Virus record (IMG/VR): IMGVR_UViG_3300028569_002417
Location: 1-64,000 of that record
DNA: 64,000 nucleotides
Strand: one strand, 5' to 3'
The notes beneath the pieces are model-generated. The model was not told where the DNA came from and did no database searches. It saw nothing but the letters and a program-made list of their open reading frames with translations. The position numbers were made by a program, and so were the translations under genes. Of the stretch, positions 1-9,583 are shown piece by piece. The stretch's first letter is position 1. Each line of letters begins with the position of its first letter.

Positions 1-105
1 GTTGCACCAGCACCAGAAGTTGCACCAGCACCAGAAGTTGCACCAGCACCAGAAGTTGCACCAGCACCAGAAGTTGCACCAGCACCAGAAGTTGCACCAG
101 CATAG
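1..105 (+). CDS. 3' end of a protein with VAPAPE tandem repeats (partial)
   Basis: 18-bp unit gttgcaccagcaccagaa x5 plus a partial copy, in frame, ending at TAG 103-105. Confidence 0.75.
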   Translation, partial: VAPAPEVAPAPEVAPAPEVAPAPEVAPAPEVAPA

Positions 106-2227: not shown

Positions 2228-2406
2228 TAAATCACTTCTGGTTCTTCTTCTTTAATATTCCAACATTTAGAAGAATCAGGAAAACTAACTGGATATCCCA
2301 TTTTCCATTCTAAACTGATTCCAAGTTCATGTCTACCAAAGGCATAATGTGTCATATTTTTGTTCCAGCATTTTTCTTGGCTGATATGATAAATGTTTCT
2401 TGTCAT
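2224..2406 (-). CDS. small hypothetical protein (microprotein array, distal member)
   Basis: 60 aa, ATGA overlap with the upstream gene, two CWN motifs. Confidence 0.5.
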   Translation of the reverse strand: MTRNIYHISQEKCWNKNMTHYAFGRHELGISLEWKMGYPVSFPDSSKCWNIKEEEPEVIY

Positions 2407-2421
2407 GCTGTTTGTTCGCTT
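2393..2421. repeat. 29-bp direct repeat copy 1 (copy 2 at 3226-3254)
   Basis: atgtttcttgtcatgctgtttgttcgctt vs atgtttcttgttatgttgtttgttcgctt, 27/29 identical. Confidence 0.85.
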
Positions 2422-3176
2422 TTTAATTCTTGCAAAAGATTAAAAAGTCTTTGTTGGAATTTACGCCAAAGTGTTGGTTTAGTTTTCCAATGCATCAAAG
2501 CCTCATAATCATTTCTGTTGATTATGCTACTGGTTATATCGTAATTTCCAGTTCTAAGAAATTCTTCTAATACTGATATTATTCTAGATTTATATTGTTC
2601 GTCTGTGTCATAAAATCTAAATTTAATATCAGACAAGATGCCCATTCCATAAGCATCAAATTCTTCTGGTGATTTATAATAAGAAGACACATTTCCCTGT
2701 GAAAAAAATTGTTTTCTTTCTGATGCTTTTTTTGCCCTATTTTCAGGATTTATTATTTGTGGATTAAGTTTTGGGTCGATTGCATGTATTGTTTCGTGAG
2801 ATAGTGCATTAACTATTGGTGGTATTTTTCTTCCGTTAGTATTAATGAAAAAGTTTCTGTTTTCTCTGAATATAATCAGAGATCTAATATTCATAACAAT
2901 TTCATCTGTCTTTGGATTATAATGTGCCATCCAATTATCGCCCAAGTCTTGAAGATAAACTGGAACTGATCTTCTTCCATCTTTTCTTTTAATTTCTCCG
3001 ACAAGAACTTTTTTTATAAAAGTTCTTGTATACAAATCATATAAATCTTCTTCAGAAGACTTTGAAATGACTATTTTCAATATTTTATCAGCGACTAAAT
3101 AAACATCTTCTTGTTGATCTTTATCAAGCTGCATGAACTTGCTTTCATTTATCATCCATTTTTTGAAATTTAACAT
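2403..3176 (-). CDS. HExxH zincin-like metallopeptidase domain protein with capsid-targeting-like N-terminus
   Basis: HETIHAID and downstream YYKSPEEFDAY; N-terminus MLNFKKWMINES; ctaaataatttATG upstream. Confidence 0.7.
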   Translation of the reverse strand: MLNFKKWMINESKFMQLDKDQQEDVYLVADKILKIVISKSSEEDLYDLYTRTFIKKVLVGEIKRKDGRRSVPVYLQDLGDNWMAHYNPKTDEIVMNIRSLIIFRENRNFFINTNGRKIPPIVNALSHETIHAIDPKLNPQIINPENRAKKASERKQFFSQGNVSSYYKSPEEFDAYGMGILSDIKFRFYDTDEQYKSRIISVLEEFLRTGNYDITSSIINRNDYEALMHWKTKPTLWRKFQQRLFNLLQELKSEQTA

Positions 3177-3225
3177 AAATTATTTAGTTTGTTTATTCGT
3201 TTATTTTCCAATGATAGGAAAATGT

Positions 3226-3254
3226 ATGTTTCTTGTTATGTTGTTTGTTCGCTT
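3226..3254. repeat. 29-bp direct repeat copy 2
   Basis: matches 2393-2421. Confidence 0.85.
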
Positions 3255-3442
3255 CTTTTCCAGTGAAGTGAAAATGAATGTCTCTTGGTCCAATGAAGGG
3301 CGCAAGATCTAAACATAGACCAAGAGCAAAACCAACTCATTGACCATGATTTGGATTTTCTATTTTGTCTTATAATAATAGACGTTGACCTATCGCCAGA
3401 CCAGCAATGATTCTCTGATACATTTTCAGTGTGTCTGTGCAT
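3236..3442 (-). CDS. Trp/Ser-rich microprotein
   Basis: 68 aa, CWS and SWSMSWFCSWS motifs. Confidence 0.55.
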   Translation of the reverse strand: MHRHTENVSENHCWSGDRSTSIIIRQNRKSKSWSMSWFCSWSMFRSCALHWTKRHSFSLHWKRSEQTT

Positions 3443-3680
3443 TTTCTTTCCTATCTAAACAACTGCTTTTTGAACTATCTTTCCAGTGAAGAGATATTTT
3501 TACATCATGTATAATTTTCAAATTCCAGTTAGCAGATCTGTTTATATCAAATATATTTGATTCAGAATAATGTAAAACACCATGATCAGATCGACATAAT
3601 GTGTCGAAACTAAACTTAGAAAAAGAAATAAATCCCGTGAAAGGGAAGCATGACGATAAATTATTTCTTTTGAATATCAT
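3426..3680 (-). CDS. small protein of the array (MIFK start)
   Basis: 84 aa, ATGA-coupled, SLHWK motif shared with the neighbour. Confidence 0.55.
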   Translation of the reverse strand: MIFKRNNLSSCFPFTGFISFSKFSFDTLCRSDHGVLHYSESNIFDINRSANWNLKIIHDVKISLHWKDSSKSSCLDRKENAQTH

Positions 3681-3913
3681 GACTTAAAGCTTCTCTGCCA
3701 GACTTTTGAATCGGGATTTTGCTGGTAGGTCCATTCGCACCCTGTTGCTTCGAGCATTACTACATGAGCAATGCTTTCCAATTCTGTCTGATACTGATTG
3801 GCATCATCATATCTTAAGGTGTCTTCGGCTTTTTCAAGAGCCTCATGTCGATCATTTGCAATCACATCAATCGTGTGTGTTTGCGTTGACGTAATCTTAA
3901 CAGTGTACTTCAT
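3677..3913 (-). CDS. DpnD/PcfM-like small protein
   Basis: MKYTVKITSTQTHTIDVIANDRHEALEKAE pattern; GAGGAG SD before ATG at 3913. Confidence 0.55.
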   Translation of the reverse strand: MKYTVKITSTQTHTIDVIANDRHEALEKAEDTLRYDDANQYQTELESIAHVVMLEATGCEWTYQQNPDSKVWQRSFKS

Positions 3914-3924
3914 CTTACTACTCC

Positions 3925-4062
3925 TCAAAAAATCATATCATTCCAAGGATAAGAACCAATTATTCTAAACGATCTGAAATATCCACTATCACATCTGCCA
4001 AAACAACAGATGTATCCTTTGTTCAATCTGCTCAAAGGGAGAGAATTTATTTTGAATATCAT
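3925..4062 (-). CDS. 45-aa microprotein (not in ORF track)
   Basis: hand translation MIFKINSLPLSRLNKGYICCFGRCDSGYFRSFRIIGSYPWNDMIF; ATGA overlap. Confidence 0.55.
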   Translation of the reverse strand: MIFKINSLPLSRLNKGYICCFGRCDSGYFRSFRIIGSYPWNDMIF

Positions 4063-4250
4063 ATTTCGCCACCAAATTTAGACCAAGAATCATCATTGGT
4101 CCAAGACCAAGATTCTGTTCTGGAATTATACCAAGACCAAGACCTAGACTTAGCCCACATGCTCGACCATTGATCATATGGCCTAGACCAAGACCTAGAC
4201 ATAAAACACCAAGATCTACTAGACCTTTCCCAAAATATTTTCAAGATCAT
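4059..4250 (-). CDS. Trp/Ser-rich microprotein
   Basis: 63 aa MILK...SRSWSW...FGGEI. Confidence 0.6.
   Translation of the reverse strand: MILKIFWERSSRSWCFMSRSWSRPYDQWSSMWAKSRSWSWYNSRTESWSWTNDDSWSKFGGEI
4093..4176. repeat. 84-bp repeat copy 1 (copy 2 at 6290-6373)
   Basis: 78/84 identical by hand alignment. Confidence 0.85.
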
Positions 4251-4271
4251 AGATCACCATTAAACTCAGAC

Positions 4272-4445
4272 TTAGAACTTATGCCAAGACCTAGACCAAG
4301 ACCTAGACACAAACATGGACACAGACATAGTGCTAGAATTAGCCCACAGTCTTGACCAAATTGACCAAGACACAGACCAAAACCAAGGTCTAGACCAACA
4401 TCTAGAATAATTATCAACATAAAAAAATCTTTGCGATCTTATCAT
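4272..4445 (-). CDS. Trp/Ser-rich microprotein, 57 aa; FNGDL tail shifted out of frame
   Basis: MIRSQRFFYVDNYSRCWSRPWFWSVSWSIWSRLWANSSTMSVSMFVSRSWSRSWHKF; SKSEFNGDL* lies in another frame. Confidence 0.55.
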   Translation of the reverse strand: MIRSQRFFYVDNYSRCWSRPWFWSVSWSIWSRLWANSSTMSVSMFVSRSWSRSWHKF

Positions 4446-4594
4446 ATTTCACCATTATGATAAACAAGTGAATACCTAAACTCAGAACCAGACCAAGACT
4501 TACACCAAGACACAGACCAAAACTCATACCCAGACCAACATCTAGACACAGACCAAGGGTCAGAATGCTTGCACCCAAATGCTTTTAATGTCAT
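4442..4594 (-). CDS. Trp/Ser-rich microprotein, 50 aa
   Basis: MTLKAFGCKHSDPWSVSRCWSGYEFWSVSWCKSWSGSEFRYSLVYHNGEI; ATGA overlaps at both ends. Confidence 0.6.
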   Translation of the reverse strand: MTLKAFGCKHSDPWSVSRCWSGYEFWSVSWCKSWSGSEFRYSLVYHNGEI

Positions 4595-4773
4595 AATTCA
4601 CCATTAAACAAAAAAGACCTATCTGAAGACAAGGACAAGGACAAAGACCAAGACCAAGACCAAGTCACAGACAAAAACCAAGACCTAGCACCAGACTCAG
4701 ACCAAGAATTAGATCTAGACTTAGATTTAGACCAACATTTAACAATTGAAGAACTATTGGTTTTGATGATCAT
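4591..4773 (-). CDS. Trp/Ser-rich microprotein, 60 aa
   Basis: MIIK...WSWSWSLSLSLSS...FNGEL. Confidence 0.6.
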   Translation of the reverse strand: MIIKTNSSSIVKCWSKSKSRSNSWSESGARSWFLSVTWSWSWSLSLSLSSDRSFLFNGEL

Positions 4774-4892
4774 GTATTATCATACCAATGTTTAGGTCGA
4801 AAACAAGCCATGTTCCAAGACCAAGATCTTGTCCAACGCTGAAGCACAGACCAGCATCTAGATGACCTGTTACGATTGTTTTTGAAGATCAT
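4770..4892 (-). CDS. Trp/Ser-rich microprotein, 40 aa
   Basis: MIFKNNRNRSSRCWSVLQRWTRSWSWNMACFRPKHWYDNT; ATGA overlaps at both ends. Confidence 0.6.
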   Translation of the reverse strand: MIFKNNRNRSSRCWSVLQRWTRSWSWNMACFRPKHWYDNT

Positions 4893-5101
4893 ATTTCACC
4901 ATTAAACAAAGAATTATTAAACCAAGACCAAGACTCATATAAAGACCTAGACCAATTCTCAGAATCAGCCATAGACCGATTCCCACACCTAGAGTAATAA
5001 ACAGACCAAGACCAAGAGTTAGAGCAATAAACAGACCAAGACCAAGAAATAGATCTAGAGTTATGCTTAATGCGATTGTGACCAACTGTTTTGAAAATCA
5101 T
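4889..5101 (-). CDS. Trp/Ser-rich microprotein, 70 aa
   Basis: MIFK...SWSWSVY x2...LFNGEI. Confidence 0.6.
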   Translation of the reverse strand: MIFKTVGHNRIKHNSRSISWSWSVYCSNSWSWSVYYSRCGNRSMADSENWSRSLYESWSWFNNSLFNGEI

Positions 5102-5262
5102 AAATCACCATTAAACAAAGTCATGCAATCTTCTGAGGATTTAACTATGCTCTGTGACCAACATAGAGATTCTCCCCAAGACCACGAATTGTTCCACCAG
5201 ACTGGAGATCCCCACAGATTGTGTGCAAAAGTTCTACAACAACATTCGCCAGTCCTGAACAT
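5098..5262 (-). CDS. Trp/Cys-rich microprotein, 54 aa
   Basis: GAGGA SD; MFRTGECCCRTFAHNLWGSPVWWNNSWSWGESLCWSQSIVKSSEDCMTLFNGDL. Confidence 0.6.
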   Translation of the reverse strand: MFRTGECCCRTFAHNLWGSPVWWNNSWSWGESLCWSQSIVKSSEDCMTLFNGDL

Positions 5263-5282
5263 AGATCGAATCCTCTATGCAA

Positions 5283-5726
5283 CTACCGTAGAAACTTAAC
5301 CCATCTTTGCTTGGGTTCTGTTGGCTGATCCGTTCTATTAATGACCCCGTCATTTCTTTTCCATTGACCACCATTTGTTACTGCTTCCATAATCCAACCA
5401 CTTGCTTTGAGACTGGTGCCCGGTTCGCTTTGTAATATGTAGGTTTGTATTTTGGTGTAACCCATTTCTTTAGCAATCCGAGCGCAGGCACCATACAGTT
5501 TTGAACAAGCGTTAGGTGTGCCATCAGTGCATAGTCTTGCCACTTCAAGAGTTAAACCATCATCTGAAGCACGAGCAACTGGTCTGCCACAAATAGCAAT
5601 CCCCACATAGATATCATCTTTAGTTAAACCTATGCTAAACTTATGTCCAACGCTAGTTTTATGATGTCGATGCCATTGTAAAACAATTTCATTTGCTTTT
5701 TTTAAGACGATAGGAACAATCTTCAT
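5283..5726 (-). CDS. XF1762-family (Mom-related GNAT-fold) protein
   Basis: HRHH..VGHKFSIG, GRPVAR..DDG.TLEV.RLCTDGT.NACS.LY, E.GTSLKASGW. Confidence 0.85.
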   Translation of the reverse strand: MKIVPIVLKKANEIVLQWHRHHKTSVGHKFSIGLTKDDIYVGIAICGRPVARASDDGLTLEVARLCTDGTPNACSKLYGACARIAKEMGYTKIQTYILQSEPGTSLKASGWIMEAVTNGGQWKRNDGVINRTDQPTEPKQRWVKFLR

Positions 5727-5836
5727 TGCAATCCAATCTCTGCTATTTTACAGTATAATTAGGTCATTCCCTGCGTAAACTGTATTGATATAGTCCTTGC
5801 GAGTCTTTTTCTCAAAGACTATTTGTGTGTTCATCG

Positions 5837-6223
5837 TCACCACCAGCTACTATAAAAAACATAAAGACCATCACCTATTGCTCTTTTAGACTGATAGATG
5901 AAATCAATATCATTTTCAATCGATTTACTATCAGGAGGATTATCGCCAAAGAAAAAACCTTCTGTGTTAGGAAGATTACCTCCTCTGATATCTTTTTCTA
6001 AATCTTCCAAATCTTCTAGCGTAAGCACAACATAATCACAATTGAACTCTCCTGTCCCACCTTTTTTATAATAAAGTTTTTTCATCCATCCATGAAGATC
6101 ATGATGCTTTCTCCAGTAAAATAATTGATTTTTATCGAGTCCTTCCACAAAGACTGGATTTGTGTCTTTCAGTTCAACAACATCTTCTTTTTTTACTGAA
6201 TAAACAAACATGTCAAGTCCCAT
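5837..6223 (-). CDS. conserved phage protein (MGLDM family)
   Basis: MGLDMF...YWRKHHDLHGWM...FNC...GFFFG...YSSWW pattern; AGGAG SD. Confidence 0.8.
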   Translation of the reverse strand: MGLDMFVYSVKKEDVVELKDTNPVFVEGLDKNQLFYWRKHHDLHGWMKKLYYKKGGTGEFNCDYVVLTLEDLEDLEKDIRGGNLPNTEGFFFGDNPPDSKSIENDIDFIYQSKRAIGDGLYVFYSSWW

Positions 6224-6279
6224 AAGACACTCCTATATGCCTGACCAAAACATAGACCAACTCCAAGGCATGGACCTAT

Positions 6280-6492
6280 TTAATCGTTTTCATTGTTCCA
6301 AGACCAAGACTCAGTTCTAGAATTATACCAAGACCAAGACCTAGACATAGCCCACATGTTCGACCATTGATCAACACGAATCCACCATGTGGAACGAACA
6401 TGCCTGTATCCATCAATAGTGCGCCAATTAAACATCATATCAAATCTAGACCATTCTCTAGATTTATTATGCGTATTTGCTCTAAGAATCAT
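6280..6492 (-). CDS. Trp/Ser-rich microprotein (paralog of 4059-4250)
   Basis: likely start MILRANTH; shares DQWS.MWA.SRSWSWYNSRTESWSW. Confidence 0.6.
   Translation of the reverse strand: MILRANTHNKSREWSRFDMMFNWRTIDGYRHVRSTWWIRVDQWSNMWAMSRSWSWYNSRTESWSWNNEND
6290..6373. repeat. 84-bp repeat copy 2
   Basis: matches 4093-4176. Confidence 0.85.
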
Positions 6493-6586
6493 AATGATTC
6501 CAACTGGTAAATCACTCAAAGCGAAAAATGTCACAGCCCTGAATTTCATCGAAATCAGAACTATGACATTACATTAAACCAAGAAA

Positions 6587-6820
6587 TTATTTAGACCTTA
6601 TCTTCTTTTTCTGCTGATTCTGAGGATATCTGGATTGCTGAACGCTTTGCGATGAGTACTTAGGCGATTGCGGTCTTTGTTGAATATATCTGCTGCCAAC
6701 AGATTGCTGATTGCTTCTTGAACTAGCCGACCGGCTAGATGTGGAAGATGGTCATGTTGGGCAATTAGGACTTGACTGTGTCATAACCAAAATACTTGCT
6801 AAAAAACTTAAATTCAACAT
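6587..6820 (-). CDS. candidate secreted selenoprotein, 77 aa, CxxU motif (in-frame UGA at codon 23)
   Basis: AAGGAG SD; MLNLSFLASILVMTQSSPNCPT-UGA then 54 open codons to TAA; SECIS-like hairpin after the UGA. Confidence 0.7.
6723..6751 (-). promoter_or_regulatory. bacterial-type SECIS element (candidate)
   Basis: UGA + 13 nt + CUAGCC-GGUC-GGCUAG perfect hairpin; loop and spacing resemble E. coli fdhF SECIS. Confidence 0.7.
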
Positions 6821-6851
6821 TGTAAACTCCTTATCATGGTGACCCGACATT

Positions 6852-6880
6852 ATCATAATCGGGGGAAAATAAACTTGCAA
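6852..6880 (-). promoter_or_regulatory. sigma70-type promoter
   Basis: TTGCAA-17 nt-TATGAT upstream of the ATG at 6820. Confidence 0.65.
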
Positions 6881-6911
6881 CTAGATTCCAGCCATTTACC
6901 AAAGAAAATAA

Positions 6912-7871
6912 TTAAGCTTGTGCTGTTCTTTGACCGCCAGCATCATTTCTAACAACGGTATTGATATGGTCAGCCATAAATCTGATAAAATTATGTAATT
7001 TAGATTTATCATTATTATTATAATAATGTAAATAAACTTGCCTCAAGTCTTGTACATCCACACTATAATTTTCTGGATTCATTATCAAATCCTTGAGAGC
7101 CTCACCAAAATTTTCTTTCGTCAATATCTCACCTGTTTTCTTGTACCAATTGCGCTTTAGTTCACCCAAACGAACACCAATTTCGGCACTATCAGTGAGA
7201 TATTTTAAGCCGGGATCGTCATTAGAAAGACTCGACTGAAACAACATGTTTTGAGTTGAATGAGATAATTCGTGACGCAAAGTTCTCAAATTTGAACGAT
7301 TATTTACAACACAAAACTTTTGACCACCGGGTATTGAAGTGCAAAAACCTGTACTACCCGGTTCGGCACCGGGATACTTATTTGGGTCCATAAAAACAAC
7401 TGGAATAGGTTTGTCTAATTCACTAGTTCTCATGTCGGCAGCAGAAGGGATTCTGGGCGCTTCAAAGTCACCAATTTTATCAGGAGAATCATAAGCCTTG
7501 GCTGACATGTCACGCACTTTTTCGTAATCTTTTCCATATTCAGGAGAAATAGCTTCACTTGGTCTTATCATCTGAACATCATTGAAATTGATGTCCAATC
7601 CAGTTTTATTTTTGATGTGATCAATAACAGATTGAATAACTGGACTTGTTGCAGACCTGACAATTGCTGGTTTCGGTGCCAAATCTACATCCATACGCTT
7701 AGGAGACGCACTACCCAATGCCAAAGCCGCACCAATACCTCCAATAATTCTTCTGACCCTGCCACTCATATCCTTGAAGAATTCGTCGTATTGAACCTCT
7801 GTCAGCATTTGAGAGAAAAGTTCAGGATCACGATTCTCAAGAAATTTAACGAATGTAAGATTAGTTTGCAT
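6912..7871 (-). CDS. HExxH metallopeptidase-like protein with capsid-targeting-like N-terminus
   Basis: TLRHELSHSTQ, downstream E in YLTDSAEIG; gtaaatattttcATG upstream; N-terminal hydrophobic segment. Confidence 0.65.
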   Translation of the reverse strand: MQTNLTFVKFLENRDPELFSQMLTEVQYDEFFKDMSGRVRRIIGGIGAALALGSASPKRMDVDLAPKPAIVRSATSPVIQSVIDHIKNKTGLDINFNDVQMIRPSEAISPEYGKDYEKVRDMSAKAYDSPDKIGDFEAPRIPSAADMRTSELDKPIPVVFMDPNKYPGAEPGSTGFCTSIPGGQKFCVVNNRSNLRTLRHELSHSTQNMLFQSSLSNDDPGLKYLTDSAEIGVRLGELKRNWYKKTGEILTKENFGEALKDLIMNPENYSVDVQDLRQVYLHYYNNNDKSKLHNFIRFMADHINTVVRNDAGGQRTAQA

Positions 7872-7886
7872 GAAAATATTTACATG

Positions 7887-8402
7887 TCAAGCAGCATAAA
7901 TTTCCAGAAATTTGTTTATATCTGCAAGAAGATTAATATTTTGCTCTACTTTTTCTTTTTCCCAATTCCACCATTCTATTTTCAGTAATTGATCTATTAC
8001 ATTTTTTTCAAATCTGTATCTAATTATTTTTGCAGGATTTCCTGCAACTATAGAAAAAGGCGGCACATCTTTAGTTATAACTGCCCTAGCACCAACTATA
8101 GAACCATGACCTATAGTCACGCCTCCAAATATCATTGCTTCAGTTCCAATCAAACAATCAGAACCAATTATGATTGGACCCCTGTCCTTTCCTATTGGAT
8201 AATTGGAATTAGGATAATGTGATCTAAATCTGAAAGTGCTTACAGTAGGATGATGCATACAAGCATGATCTATCGGTCCACCACACAAGAATGTCACTCT
8301 CCTAGCTATTCCTGAATAATTTCCAACAGTTATCTGGTAATTAGGGAAATGCATAATACAGTCTGGCGCAATACTCGAAAGAGTACCAAGAGTTATTCCC
8401 AT
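7887..8402 (-). CDS. CatB/xenobiotic-type hexapeptide O-acetyltransferase
   Basis: hexapeptide repeats, VITKDVPPFSIVAGNPAKIIRYRF, LLKIEWWNW; start uncertain. Confidence 0.85.
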   Translation of the reverse strand: MGITLGTLSSIAPDCIMHFPNYQITVGNYSGIARRVTFLCGGPIDHACMHHPTVSTFRFRSHYPNSNYPIGKDRGPIIIGSDCLIGTEAMIFGGVTIGHGSIVGARAVITKDVPPFSIVAGNPAKIIRYRFEKNVIDQLLKIEWWNWEKEKVEQNINLLADINKFLEIYAA

Positions 8403-8614
8403 GACTCACTCTCAAAAGAGAATTCTTCAAAAGGAAATATTTTTTCTTCAATGAAACAATGACAAAAAACTGAATTCATGTCAAATGTTCCACACAAAAT
8501 AATTCTTTGTGACCAACCTCTAGAATAACAAAAATCATTCCAATTTGAATGATATAAATCTTTCTTAAAAAGAAAGATTGACCAAAAATTATTTGCAGAA
8601 CCAATGGTTTTCAT
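8393..8614 (-). CDS. aromatic/Cys-rich microprotein
   Basis: MKTIGSANNFWS...WNDFCYSRGWS, similar to neighbours. Confidence 0.5.
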   Translation of the reverse strand: MKTIGSANNFWSIFLFKKDLYHSNWNDFCYSRGWSQRIILCGTFDMNSVFCHCFIEEKIFPFEEFSFESESWE

Positions 8615-8707
8615 GTGTATCCCGCCTAACAACTGCAAAATAAAATTCTGCCCCTATTATATCATAAAAAAAACGAAAATCAACAGTTTTATAATATGAT
8701 TGGGGCT

Positions 8708-8872
8708 TCATTGATCGAAAGACCAACAAGCAGAAAAAATGTAACCACGATGGTGTTCAGATATAATGGTAAATCCAGAGAAAGAACAATCGTCATTCCA
8801 TGACCTAGAAACTGGTTTGGTCAAAGACCAACAACAATTATTGTTGTAGTCAGAATTTGCCCTGAGAATCAT
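8708..8872 (-). CDS. Trp/Cys/Ser-rich microprotein, 54 aa (not in track)
   Basis: MILRANSDYNNNCCWSLTKPVSRSWNDDCSFSGFTIISEHHRGYIFSACWSFDQ; GGAG SD. Confidence 0.65.
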   Translation of the reverse strand: MILRANSDYNNNCCWSLTKPVSRSWNDDCSFSGFTIISEHHRGYIFSACWSFDQ

Positions 8873-8889
8873 TTATAAACTCCATATGA

Positions 8890-9051
8890 TCATTCGTTGT
8901 AAGACCAACACGAACAACAAATGTGACCATTCTGAACAGAGAAAATTGTAAATCCAGAGTAAGAGCAATAATTGTTCCATGATCTGGAAACCGATATATC
9001 TCCAGACCAACACCAGTTGGTGTGATTGTAAGAATTTTCTCTAAGAATCAT
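8890..9051 (-). CDS. Trp/Cys/Ser-rich microprotein, 53 aa, tandem paralog of 8708-8872
   Basis: MILRENSYNHTNWCWSGDISVSRSWNNYCSYSGFTIFSVQNGHICCSCWSYNE. Confidence 0.65.
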   Translation of the reverse strand: MILRENSYNHTNWCWSGDISVSRSWNNYCSYSGFTIFSVQNGHICCSCWSYNE

Positions 9052-9067
9052 TAATATTACTCAATTT

Positions 9068-9583
9068 TCAATATTTGGATCGCACCAAGTCAATCTCTGG
9101 GCGAAAATCTCTTCCACCGTAATCCTCTGGTCTTTTTCCCAATTTCTCTATACTCCAATAAACCTGATCGATCTTTTTATCATACCAAGTATCTTCTCTT
9201 CTAAGATTTCTCAAGAATAACCCTTGATCAGGTCTATTACCAGTGTGACGATTAACTGCACTCAATTTATTTGGATGTATTTTTTCCACAAGCAAATTAT
9301 ATAATGTTATAATACTGAATTGAAAATCTAACATCTTTCTTGCATCACGATTTGCATAAAAAAATAAAGACTGCACAATTTTATCACGCTGCATAGCCTC
9401 CCAATCCCAAGGCAAACTAGCAAAAGACTTTACATAATTTTTTGAAAATCCCTCTCCTTCATCACTCTCATTCAGCCATTCTGCAAAAGAAAATTTATTT
9501 TCTTTAACGCAATTTGGAACTGTTCTACCACCTTTCTTTTTCATTCCTATTTGCTTATAGCCTTTCCAACAAGCCTCATTCAT
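9068..9583 (-). CDS. putative virion protein with CWKGY..VPNCV module
   Basis: first ~40 aa nearly identical to 23602-24000; SFAEWLNES motif. Confidence 0.75.
   Translation of the reverse strand: MNEACWKGYKQIGMKKKGGRTVPNCVKENKFSFAEWLNESDEGEGFSKNYVKSFASLPWDWEAMQRDKIVQSLFFYANRDARKMLDFQFSIITLYNLLVEKIHPNKLSAVNRHTGNRPDQGLFLRNLRREDTWYDKKIDQVYWSIEKLGKRPEDYGGRDFRPEIDLVRSKY

What the first reader, a model, noticed from the sequence alone, without database searches (positions are those of the whole stretch)
4059..5115. Conserved ~18-nt junction repeat separating variable cassettes
Seen: TTTAATGGTGA(A/T)(A/T/C)TATGA (minus strand) recurs at 5098-5115, 4889-4906, 4591-4608, 4442-4457, 4247-4264 and, degenerate, at 4059-4076, about 150-300 nt apart. 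It encodes the shared FNG(E/D)(I/L)* tail, but also holds an SD-like GGTGA plus the stop/start overlap. At 4247-4264 it is kept even though the upstream ORF stops early and the tail is out of frame. Inference: the conserved unit is the nucleotide junction (coupling cassette and possible recombination point), giving a repeat/variable-insert architecture where each insert is a gene.
Basis: partly seen in the sequence, partly recalled or inferred. Interest (0 to 1): 0.65.

Follow-up and report, generated by a model that had tools for sequence, protein, structure and literature searches.

The report
Shuffling mini-gene array in lake phage
The repeated 18-base motif is the shared end-and-start boundary of a row of tiny tryptophan-rich genes in a large lake phage. 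Related phages gain and lose whole genes by recombining at that boundary, which is real and tidy but a variant of known phage gene shuffling.

Summary
There are six minus-strand copies at the stated places and none elsewhere in the 225-kb phage record. No shuffle out of 100 reached six copies.

The motif is the 3' part of a ~32-nt boundary repeat in a tandem array of paralogous mini-genes (40-70 codons, Trp 10-16%, Ser 20-33%). The array lies downstream of a Mom-like DNA-modification gene in an uncultured freshwater jumbo myophage.

Each boundary holds four things:
- the tail of one gene (LFNGE-I/L)
- an SD-like GGTGA
- an ATGA stop/start overlap
- the MI(F/L)K head of the next gene

Third-codon-position variation shows that the Trp/Ser frame is the coding frame.

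About 15 related arrays carry 2-8 cassettes in different orders, and the first cassette is followed by four different partners. Contigs from other lakes lack whole cassettes, with crossovers inside the motif. Breakpoints are enriched at boundaries (41% against 20%) but are not confined to them.

Synonymous sites in the boundary vary as fast as in the cores. The "out-of-frame but kept" copy reflects a single extra base that contigs from two other lake runs and L067 lack.

The proteins are a lineage-restricted ORFan family of unknown function. The boundary repeat is neither a PeSL nor an integron site.

The parts
5283..5726 (-). Mom-like DNA modification gene directly upstream of the array, in the same orientation
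   Evidence: phrog_1384, E 7e-38; weak Pfam Mom hit
5098..5262 (-). Cassette A (54 aa), the first array gene; tail LFNGDL. It is conserved in all related arrays
5089..5120 (-). Boundary repeat A/B (32 nt): tail, GGTGA, ATGA and head
4889..5101 (-). Cassette B (70 aa, MIFKTV...LFNGEI). It is absent from L009 and others
4880..4911 (-). Boundary repeat B/C
4770..4892 (-). Cassette C (40 aa, tail WYDNT). The C/D boundary has the ATGA overlap and head motif only
4591..4773 (-). Cassette D (60 aa). L009 carries a 14-codon head-plus-tail remnant of it
4582..4613 (-). Boundary repeat D/E, one side of the E+F deletion joint
4442..4594 (-). Cassette E (50 aa, tail YHNGEI)
4442..4459 (-). Boundary motif E/F (2 mismatches)
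4272..4445 (-). Cassette F, frameshifted by one extra base at 4276. Without that base it would run to 4247 and end in SEFNGDL
4238..4269 (-). Boundary repeat F/G, the other side of the E+F deletion joint
4059..4250 (-). Cassette G (63 aa, tail KFGGEI)
4050..4081 (-). Boundary repeat G/H (degenerate; GGTGGCGA)
3925..4062 (-). Cassette H (45 aa, MIFKIN...), the last array member before gene I
3677..3913 (-). Gene I (78 aa, MKYTVKIT...), of ordinary composition; it marks the array's 3' border in relatives
3426..3680 (-). Gene J (MIFKRN...), ATGA-coupled to I and carrying the same head motif (3663-3680)
3236..3442 (-). Gene K, a Trp/Ser/Cys-rich relative
6280..6549 (-). Dispersed paralogue sharing the DQWS..SRSWSWYNSRTESWSW block with cassette G. 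Its likely true start is the internal MILR at about 6492

Best explanation
The motif is the gene boundary of a tandem array of paralogous, translationally coupled mini-genes in the accessory region of a freshwater jumbo myophage.

Each ~32-nt boundary encodes the C-terminal tail of one cassette and contains an SD-like GGTGA 3 nt before the next start. It overlaps stop and start as ATGA and encodes the next cassette's MI(F/L)K head. The RNA there is unstructured.

I infer two functions. First, the boundary lets ribosomes that terminate on one cassette re-initiate on the next, so the row is expressed as one polycistronic chain. Second, because it is the only long stretch of identity between otherwise diverged low-complexity cores, it is the preferred site of unequal homologous recombination or slippage. 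The phage has its own RecA/UvsX-like recombinase. Such events add, delete and reorder whole cassettes while keeping frame and coupling.

The cores, (S-W-S-R/K)n encoded by TCTTGG-type hexamers, also change by slippage.

Shown here: the anatomy, the coding frame, the SD enrichment, cassette-level polymorphism, and crossovers inside the motif. Inferred: actual coupling, and the recombination mechanism.

The protein function is unknown. My best guess is fast-evolving host-interaction or counter-defence mini-proteins, given the position behind a Mom-like gene.
For: - Motif statistics and uniqueness in the record; the 32-nt repeat family.
- A chain of ORFs joined by ATGA. 38 of 53 unique boundaries across relatives are ATGA, 4 are TAATG, and one locus uses GTGA.
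- Variable sites by codon position are 56/53/123, which supports the Trp/Ser frame.
- SD pairing is -5.6 against -2.4 kcal/mol (p 1e-12). Non-homologous tails (WRKSI, WSKNI, WRRSI, SGDEI) carry GGAGG or GGAG.
- The junction RNAs fold no better than shuffles, z +0.4 to +1.6.
- There is no excess of promoters or terminators.
- Cassette content differs among about 15 related arrays, with 300-1348 nt between A and I.
- A nearly identical contig in run X3 (7 mismatches over 809 nt) lacks E+F, with the crossover inside GTTTAATGGTGA. The same joint is seen in run X7. Joints A-to-E, A-to-F and A-to-G also occur.
- Alignment ends are enriched near starts, 41% against 20%.
- The record encodes a RecA-family recombinase.
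Against: - Synonymous sites in the boundary vary as fast as in the cores, so selection on the nucleotides as such is not shown.
- GGT is invariant although GGA would give an equally good SD. This points to shared descent or homogenisation rather than SD selection.
- Most breakpoints (about 60%) lie outside the boundary, and the counts are not independent.
- All read evidence comes from contigs, not raw reads. The only RNA-library contig does not prove transcription.
- No translation or coupling data exist.
- The structure predictions are of low confidence.
Confidence: 0.75

Rival explanations
1. Passive by-product. The boundary similarity is only what is left of recent tandem duplications of one small gene. 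Gene ends are kept by ordinary peptide-level selection, the boundary has no role of its own, and recombination there is incidental.
For: Third-position variability in the tail equals that of the core. GGT is invariant although GGA is the commoner Gly codon and would be equally SD-like. Cassettes share further elements such as SRCWS, as paralogues would. Breakpoints also occur in cores.
Against: The cores have diverged beyond alignment while the ends stay 78-100% identical. Tails with unrelated peptides still carry SD-like motifs. ATGA overlaps persist through many rearrangements, including a 14-codon head-plus-tail remnant.
Confidence: 0.2
2. A dedicated diversification device. The boundary repeat is selected for evolvability, so the array works as a recombination-driven library of Trp-ladder mini-proteins for an arms race with host defences. 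This would be functionally analogous to integron cassettes or contingency loci.
For: There is extreme cassette polymorphism among near-identical phages from many lakes. The array sits behind a Mom-like anti-restriction-type gene. It is a lineage-restricted ORFan family. Hexamer runs keep all three frames open.
Against: No function is known for any cassette. No recombinase specific to the site was found, and there is no tyrosine integrase in the record. Second-order selection is hard to show. The same pattern arises from any tandem paralogue array.
Confidence: 0.12
3. An array of precursor peptides for a ribosomally made, post-translationally modified Trp-containing natural product, with a short shared N-terminal region and a variable Trp-rich core.
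For: There are many tandem small ORFs with a shared N-terminal pattern (MIxKxN...SRCWS) and Trp-rich cores containing W-S-K-S-type strings.
Against: No radical SAM gene lies in the 225 kb held. No maturase-like Pfam or PHROG family was found among the neighbours. The shared leader is very short, and the conserved C-terminal tail is atypical. No family match was found.
Confidence: 0.05
4. Not genes at all. This would be a non-coding microsatellite-like region whose open frames are a side effect of stop-free TCTTGG repeats, with the motif serving as a regulatory or protein-binding DNA site such as a PeSL or an attC-like site.
For: All three forward frames are open in the hexamer runs. The +1 frame even gives membrane-protein-like LGLG ORFs. 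Trp at 10-16% is very unusual.
Against: Variable sites concentrate at third positions of the Trp/Ser frame, 123 against 56 and 53, including in the non-repetitive cassettes. ATG starts tile the region exactly in about 15 divergent arrays. There is no excess of promoters or terminators, no stem-loop and no inverted repeats.
Confidence: 0.03

Closest known systems
PeSL (promoter-early stem-loop) cassettes that mediate modular shuffling in hyperplastic regions of T4-type phages (PMC2839356; PMC4122927)
   Same: Both are short conserved motifs at the borders of small accessory ORFan genes. Both include an SD and the start codon of the downstream gene. Recombination between copies explains insertions, deletions and replacements between closely related phages.
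   Different: PeSLs are intergenic and consist of a strong sigma-70 promoter plus a terminator stem-loop. Here there is no intergenic space (ATGA overlap), no promoter or terminator signal and no stem-loop. The repeat is coding sequence shared by paralogues, and expression would be by translational coupling rather than by one promoter per gene.
Translational coupling of overlapping genes (ATGA/TGATG overlaps with an SD inside the upstream gene), as in many bacterial and phage operons (general knowledge)
   Same: It has a four-base stop/start overlap, an SD-like element in the last codons of the upstream gene and unstructured RNA at the junction.
   Different: The same junction is repeated up to seven times in a row between paralogues and doubles as the recombination tract. 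Coupling itself was not tested.
Tandem multigene families that evolve by unequal crossing-over (general knowledge); in-ORF tandem repeats that create low-complexity protein regions in Borg elements (bioRxiv 10.1101/2022.05.18.492195, abstract only)
   Same: Copy number varies between close relatives, chimeric members occur, and slippage in short nucleotide repeats creates low-complexity protein segments.
   Different: The units here are complete 40-70-codon genes with their own starts and stops. The family is restricted to one uncultured freshwater phage lineage.
Integron gene cassettes
   Same: It is a row of small, same-strand, promoterless genes separated by a recurring boundary element, with cassette gain, loss and reordering.
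   Different: There is no attC-type imperfect inverted repeat and no integrase. The cassettes are paralogues, and the crossovers look like homologous rather than site-specific events.

Membership tests
PeSL regulatory cassette (T4-type phages) | Sigma-70-like early promoter in the motif | tested here: not met
   Promoter-like sites in 2300-7000: 16 found against 18.6 expected. Only one 9/12 match touches a junction, and its -35 lies in sequence unique to cassette A
PeSL regulatory cassette (T4-type phages) | Stable stem-loop (terminator/attenuator) | tested here: not met
   Five junction contexts fold no better than shuffles (z +0.4 to +1.6). No inverted repeats at the junctions. No terminator excess
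PeSL regulatory cassette (T4-type phages) | Intergenic position between stop and downstream SD/start | tested here: not met
   Stop and start overlap as ATGA, and the repeat is coding on both sides
PeSL regulatory cassette (T4-type phages) | Copies flank indels and replacements between close relatives | tested here: met
Translationally coupled overlapping genes | Stop/start overlap (ATGA, TAATG, GTGA) | tested here: met
   38 ATGA and 4 TAATG among 53 unique boundaries; GTGA in L075
Translationally coupled overlapping genes | SD-like element within the 3' end of the upstream gene | tested here: met
   75% of junctions have dG of -4 kcal/mol or lower, against 20% of interior windows
Translationally coupled overlapping genes | Downstream translation depends on upstream translation | not testable with these tools
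   Needs a reporter assay or ribosome profiling
Integron cassette / attC | Imperfect inverted repeat that forms a folded attC | tested here: not met
Integron cassette / attC | Adjacent tyrosine integrase (IntI) | tested here: not met
   No PF00589 match in the 225-kb record, which is only about 52% complete
RiPP precursor array | Conserved leader plus hypervariable core | tested here: inconclusive
   Only a 4-6-residue head and an SRCWS element are shared, and a conserved C-terminal tail is also present
RiPP precursor array | Modifying enzyme encoded nearby | tested here: not met
   No radical SAM in the record. The neighbours are Mom-like, hexapeptide transferases or unknowns
Any described protein family (Pfam, PHROGs) | Profile match for the cassette proteins | tested here: not met
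   No Pfam hit even at E up to 10, and no PHROG hit below E 0.3. An exhaustive HMMER search of 1.84 billion representatives gave 5 hits, all from the same lineage

The most novel reading that the evidence does not exclude
The array is a purpose-built diversification locus. It would be a recombination-driven, translationally coupled cassette library of basic Trp/Ser/Arg mini-proteins whose Trp residues sit on one face of beta-strand-like repeats. The ~32-nt boundary repeat would be maintained because it lets the phage population rapidly reshuffle its repertoire against host defences. That would make it a homologous-recombination counterpart of integrons in a lytic jumbo phage.
Probability: 0.12. 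Interest if true: 0.8.

Novelty: new variant of a known kind. Interest (0 to 1): 0.5.

Why it matters
The locus shows directly, in wild lake phage populations, how a short boundary repeat lets whole mini-genes be added, removed and reordered in frame. The outcome is the same as PeSL-mediated shuffling in T4-type phages, but it is achieved with a coding, translationally coupled junction instead of a promoter-terminator cassette.

It also defines a lineage-restricted family of extremely Trp-rich mini-proteins of unknown function next to a Mom-like DNA-modification gene. That makes them reasonable candidates for host-interaction or counter-defence factors.

The locus could serve as a natural marker of phage microdiversity and as a test bed for translational re-initiation.

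Tried and rejected
- Megablast of 3000-9500 against isolate phages gave no match. The tail sheath is under 40% identical to any isolate, so the host is unknown.
- A long degenerate junction pattern scanned in viral contigs found nothing because it was too strict.
- Loci L010-L063, found through the Mom-like gene, carry other downstream genes and no array.
- Pfam and PHROGs gave nothing for the cassettes. The ESM Atlas feature search gave no usable hit.
- AlphaFold2 gave low-confidence models. Cassette G with an 11-sequence alignment reached pLDDT 57. Cassette B alone reached pLDDT 65. The models disagree in secondary structure, so no fold search was run.
- A thrombospondin/WSXWS-like or Trp-zipper reading remains only a resemblance. 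Trp-Trp spacings of 4 and 6 are strongly enriched and odd spacings depleted, but there is no profile match.
- The membrane-protein-like LGLG ORFs in the +1 frame (for example 4870-5085) were rejected as by-products of stop-free hexamers, on the codon-phase test.
- An alternative genetic code was considered and dropped. The long ORFs are intact under table 11.
- A CRISPR-like repeat-spacer reading was rejected. The units are coding, the 'spacers' are 150-300 nt paralogous genes, and the repeats have no structure.
- The literature search for Trp-rich tandem phage mini-proteins found nothing relevant.

Full report
**Context**

The window is the first 64 kb of a 225,527-bp IMG/VR virus record that CheckV rates about 52% complete. 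The record encodes a contractile tail sheath, PrkA and an intein-bearing SpoVR homologue. It also encodes a RecA/UvsX-family recombinase. GC content is about 35%. The tail sheath is under 40% identical to that of any isolated phage, and megablast of the region against isolate phages finds nothing. This is therefore an uncultured jumbo myophage. The runs that hold the stretch are lake-water or freshwater metagenomes from 13 studies.

**Observation**

Four copies are exact and two have 2-3 mismatches. Shuffles give a mean of 1.74, and none of 100 reaches six. There are no further copies in the 225-kb record.

The repeat is longer than 18 nt. Five boundaries share a 32-nt unit at 78-100% identity. 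A head element, ATGAT(A/C/T)TTCAAAA, also recurs at boundaries that lack the tail (4756-4773, 3663-3680).

**Anatomy**

On the minus strand, a Mom-like DNA-modification gene (5283-5726; phrog_1384, E 7e-38) is followed by eight small ORFs, A to H (5262 down to 3925). Then come gene I, of ordinary composition, and two more family-like ORFs, J and K.

Seven successive boundaries are ATGA overlaps. The proteins have these properties:
- length 40-70 residues
- Trp 10-16%, against 1.2% in the phage's long ORFs
- Ser 20-33%
- mostly basic, pI 9-11.6

The cores are encoded by TCTTGG/TCTAGG-type 6- and 12-nt repeats. Trp-Trp spacings of 4 and 6 residues are enriched 2-3-fold, while odd spacings are depleted. 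So the Trp residues would lie on one face of an extended strand, often alternating with Arg or Lys.

Cassettes also share an SRCWS element near codon 12-16. They are therefore paralogues with conserved ends and a hypervariable core, not unrelated inserts.

**Are they genes, and in which frame?**

The hexamer runs contain no stops in any forward frame, so open frames prove little. The +1 frame even gives hydrophobic LGLG ORFs.

I grouped orthologous cassettes from related loci and counted variable sites by codon position in the Trp/Ser frame. The counts are 56/53/123 for positions 1/2/3, and the third-position excess also holds in the non-repetitive members A, H and J. ATG or GTG starts tile the region in about 15 divergent arrays. 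The Trp/Ser frame is the coding frame.

**Relatives**

The cassettes match no Pfam or PHROG family. A word-based search of 5.8 billion proteins found 8 hits. An exhaustive HMMER search of 1.84 billion representatives found 5. All hits belong to this phage lineage, so this is an ORFan family. Structure predictions are of low confidence, and I draw nothing from them.

**Expression logic**

The region has no excess of promoters or terminators. The junction RNAs are less structured than shuffled controls.

Pairing to the anti-SD sequence in the 17 nt upstream of coupled starts averages -5.6 kcal/mol, against -2.4 for windows inside cassettes. A value of -4 or lower is reached by 75% of junctions against 20% of interior windows (p 1e-12). 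In a second array type the tail peptides are unrelated (WRKSI, WSKNI, WRRSI, SGDEI), yet they carry GGAGG or GGAG at the same place.

This supports the reading of an SD plus stop/start overlap, that is, translational coupling. It remains an inference.

**Recombination**

Seventeen related loci from viral and metagenome collections give about 15 distinct arrays with 2-8 cassettes. Between cassette A and gene I they span 300 to 1348 nt, and the window's array is the longest. Specific comparisons show the following:

- **Partners of A.** Cassette A's tail is joined to four different next cassettes (B, C, G or an E-type) in different phages.
- **L009 against the window.** L009 lacks B, with both breakpoints inside the boundary repeat. 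In place of D-E-F it keeps only a 14-codon head-plus-tail ORF that is still ATGA-coupled on both sides.
- **X3 and X7.** In run X3, a contig that differs from the window at only 7 of 809 positions skips 4254-4597 (E+F). The crossover lies within the shared GTTTAATGGTGA. The same joint is present in run X7, from another study.
- **Other joints.** Further joints link A directly to E, F or G at the motif.
- **All pairs.** Ends of alignments with at least 85% identity lie within 20 nt of a start codon in 41% of cases, against 20% expected (maximum 31% in 2000 randomisations). These counts are not independent.
- **Breakpoints inside cores.** One protein combines G's head with E's tail, and about 60% of alignment ends fall inside cassettes.

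(1) The copy at 4247-4264 that is 'kept although out of frame' is explained by one extra base at 4276. Contigs in X3 and X7 and locus L067 lack that base, and there F ends in frame with ...SEFNGEL. The frameshift may be recent or an assembly error, so it says nothing about nucleotide-level selection. L071 holds a second decayed cassette that keeps its junction, which is equally inconclusive.

(2) Among orthologues, third positions vary in the tail (11%) as in the core (13%), and more in the head (22%). Positions 1-2 of the tail are more constrained, at 2-3% against 6%. GGT is invariant in the FNG tails even though GGA is the commoner Gly codon. This fits shared descent or homogenisation.

Conservation is thus largely at the peptide-plus-SD level. 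The nucleotides matter as the homology tract for recombination.

**Comparison with known systems**

The closest described system is PeSL-mediated modular shuffling in T4-type hyperplastic regions (PMC2839356; PMC4122927). The evolutionary outcome is the same. However, three defining PeSL features fail here: the promoter, the stem-loop and the intergenic position.

It is not an integron. There is no attC-like structure, and no integrase was found in the 225 kb held.

A RiPP-precursor reading is not excluded but lacks a maturase.

**Verdict**

It is wrong on the frameshift argument and overstated on nucleotide-only conservation. The locus is a new variant of a known kind of phage genome plasticity, and it carries an unexplained ORFan family of Trp-rich mini-proteins.

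Noticed in passing
window 1-102: A perfect 18-nt tandem repeat (GTTGCACCAGCACCAGAA, 5.7 copies, 100% match) sits at the very start of the contig. It may be part of a repeat-containing gene cut by the contig end, or an assembly end effect.
   Followed up: no
G000 187836-190634 and 184123-186201 (outside the window): The phage encodes a SpoVR homologue interrupted by an intein with a LAGLIDADG domain. A PrkA-type kinase lies next to it. This is an unusual host-like stress/sporulation gene pair for a phage.
   Followed up: no
window 6280-6549, 8708-8872, 8890-9051, 2224-2406 (all minus strand): Further Trp/Cys/Ser-rich small ORFs with MILR/MTRN heads are dispersed among other genes in the first 9 kb. 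In the 225 kb, ORFs that are clearly of this Trp-rich family lie only at 3.2-9.1 kb.
   Followed up: partly
window 4870-5085, 4247-4420, 4414-4578 (minus strand, +1 frame): Overlapping ORFs read as Leu/Gly-rich membrane-like peptides. The codon-phase test makes them by-products of stop-free hexamer repeats. Even so, any 1-nt indel would switch a cassette into this frame.
   Followed up: partly
window 4596-4709: There is a depth spike in all runs (up to 7948 in the RNA library). It is caused by unrelated contigs matching the (GACCAA)n low-complexity run, and it is not evidence of expression.
   Followed up: no
window 3660-5199 (run X20): A 2,984-nt contig from a metatranscriptomic library carries a related array at 85-95% identity, with A joined directly to G. 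It is only a hint of transcription, because DNA carry-over cannot be excluded.
   Followed up: no
L080 4135-4532: In one relative the second cassette is ATGA-coupled directly to the gene I homologue, whose start is changed to MNYTVKIT. The array there has only two cassettes.
   Followed up: no
L010-L017 (downstream of the Mom-like gene): Homologues of the Mom-like gene at 74-90% identity sit in other viral contigs. There they are followed by unrelated genes, including a small zinc-ribbon-like ORF and a putative methyltransferase, and not by the array.
   Followed up: no
G000 162147-163364: This is a RecA/UvsX-family recombinase gene (PF00154, E 8e-33). It is relevant to repeat-mediated recombination but was not examined further.
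   Followed up: no
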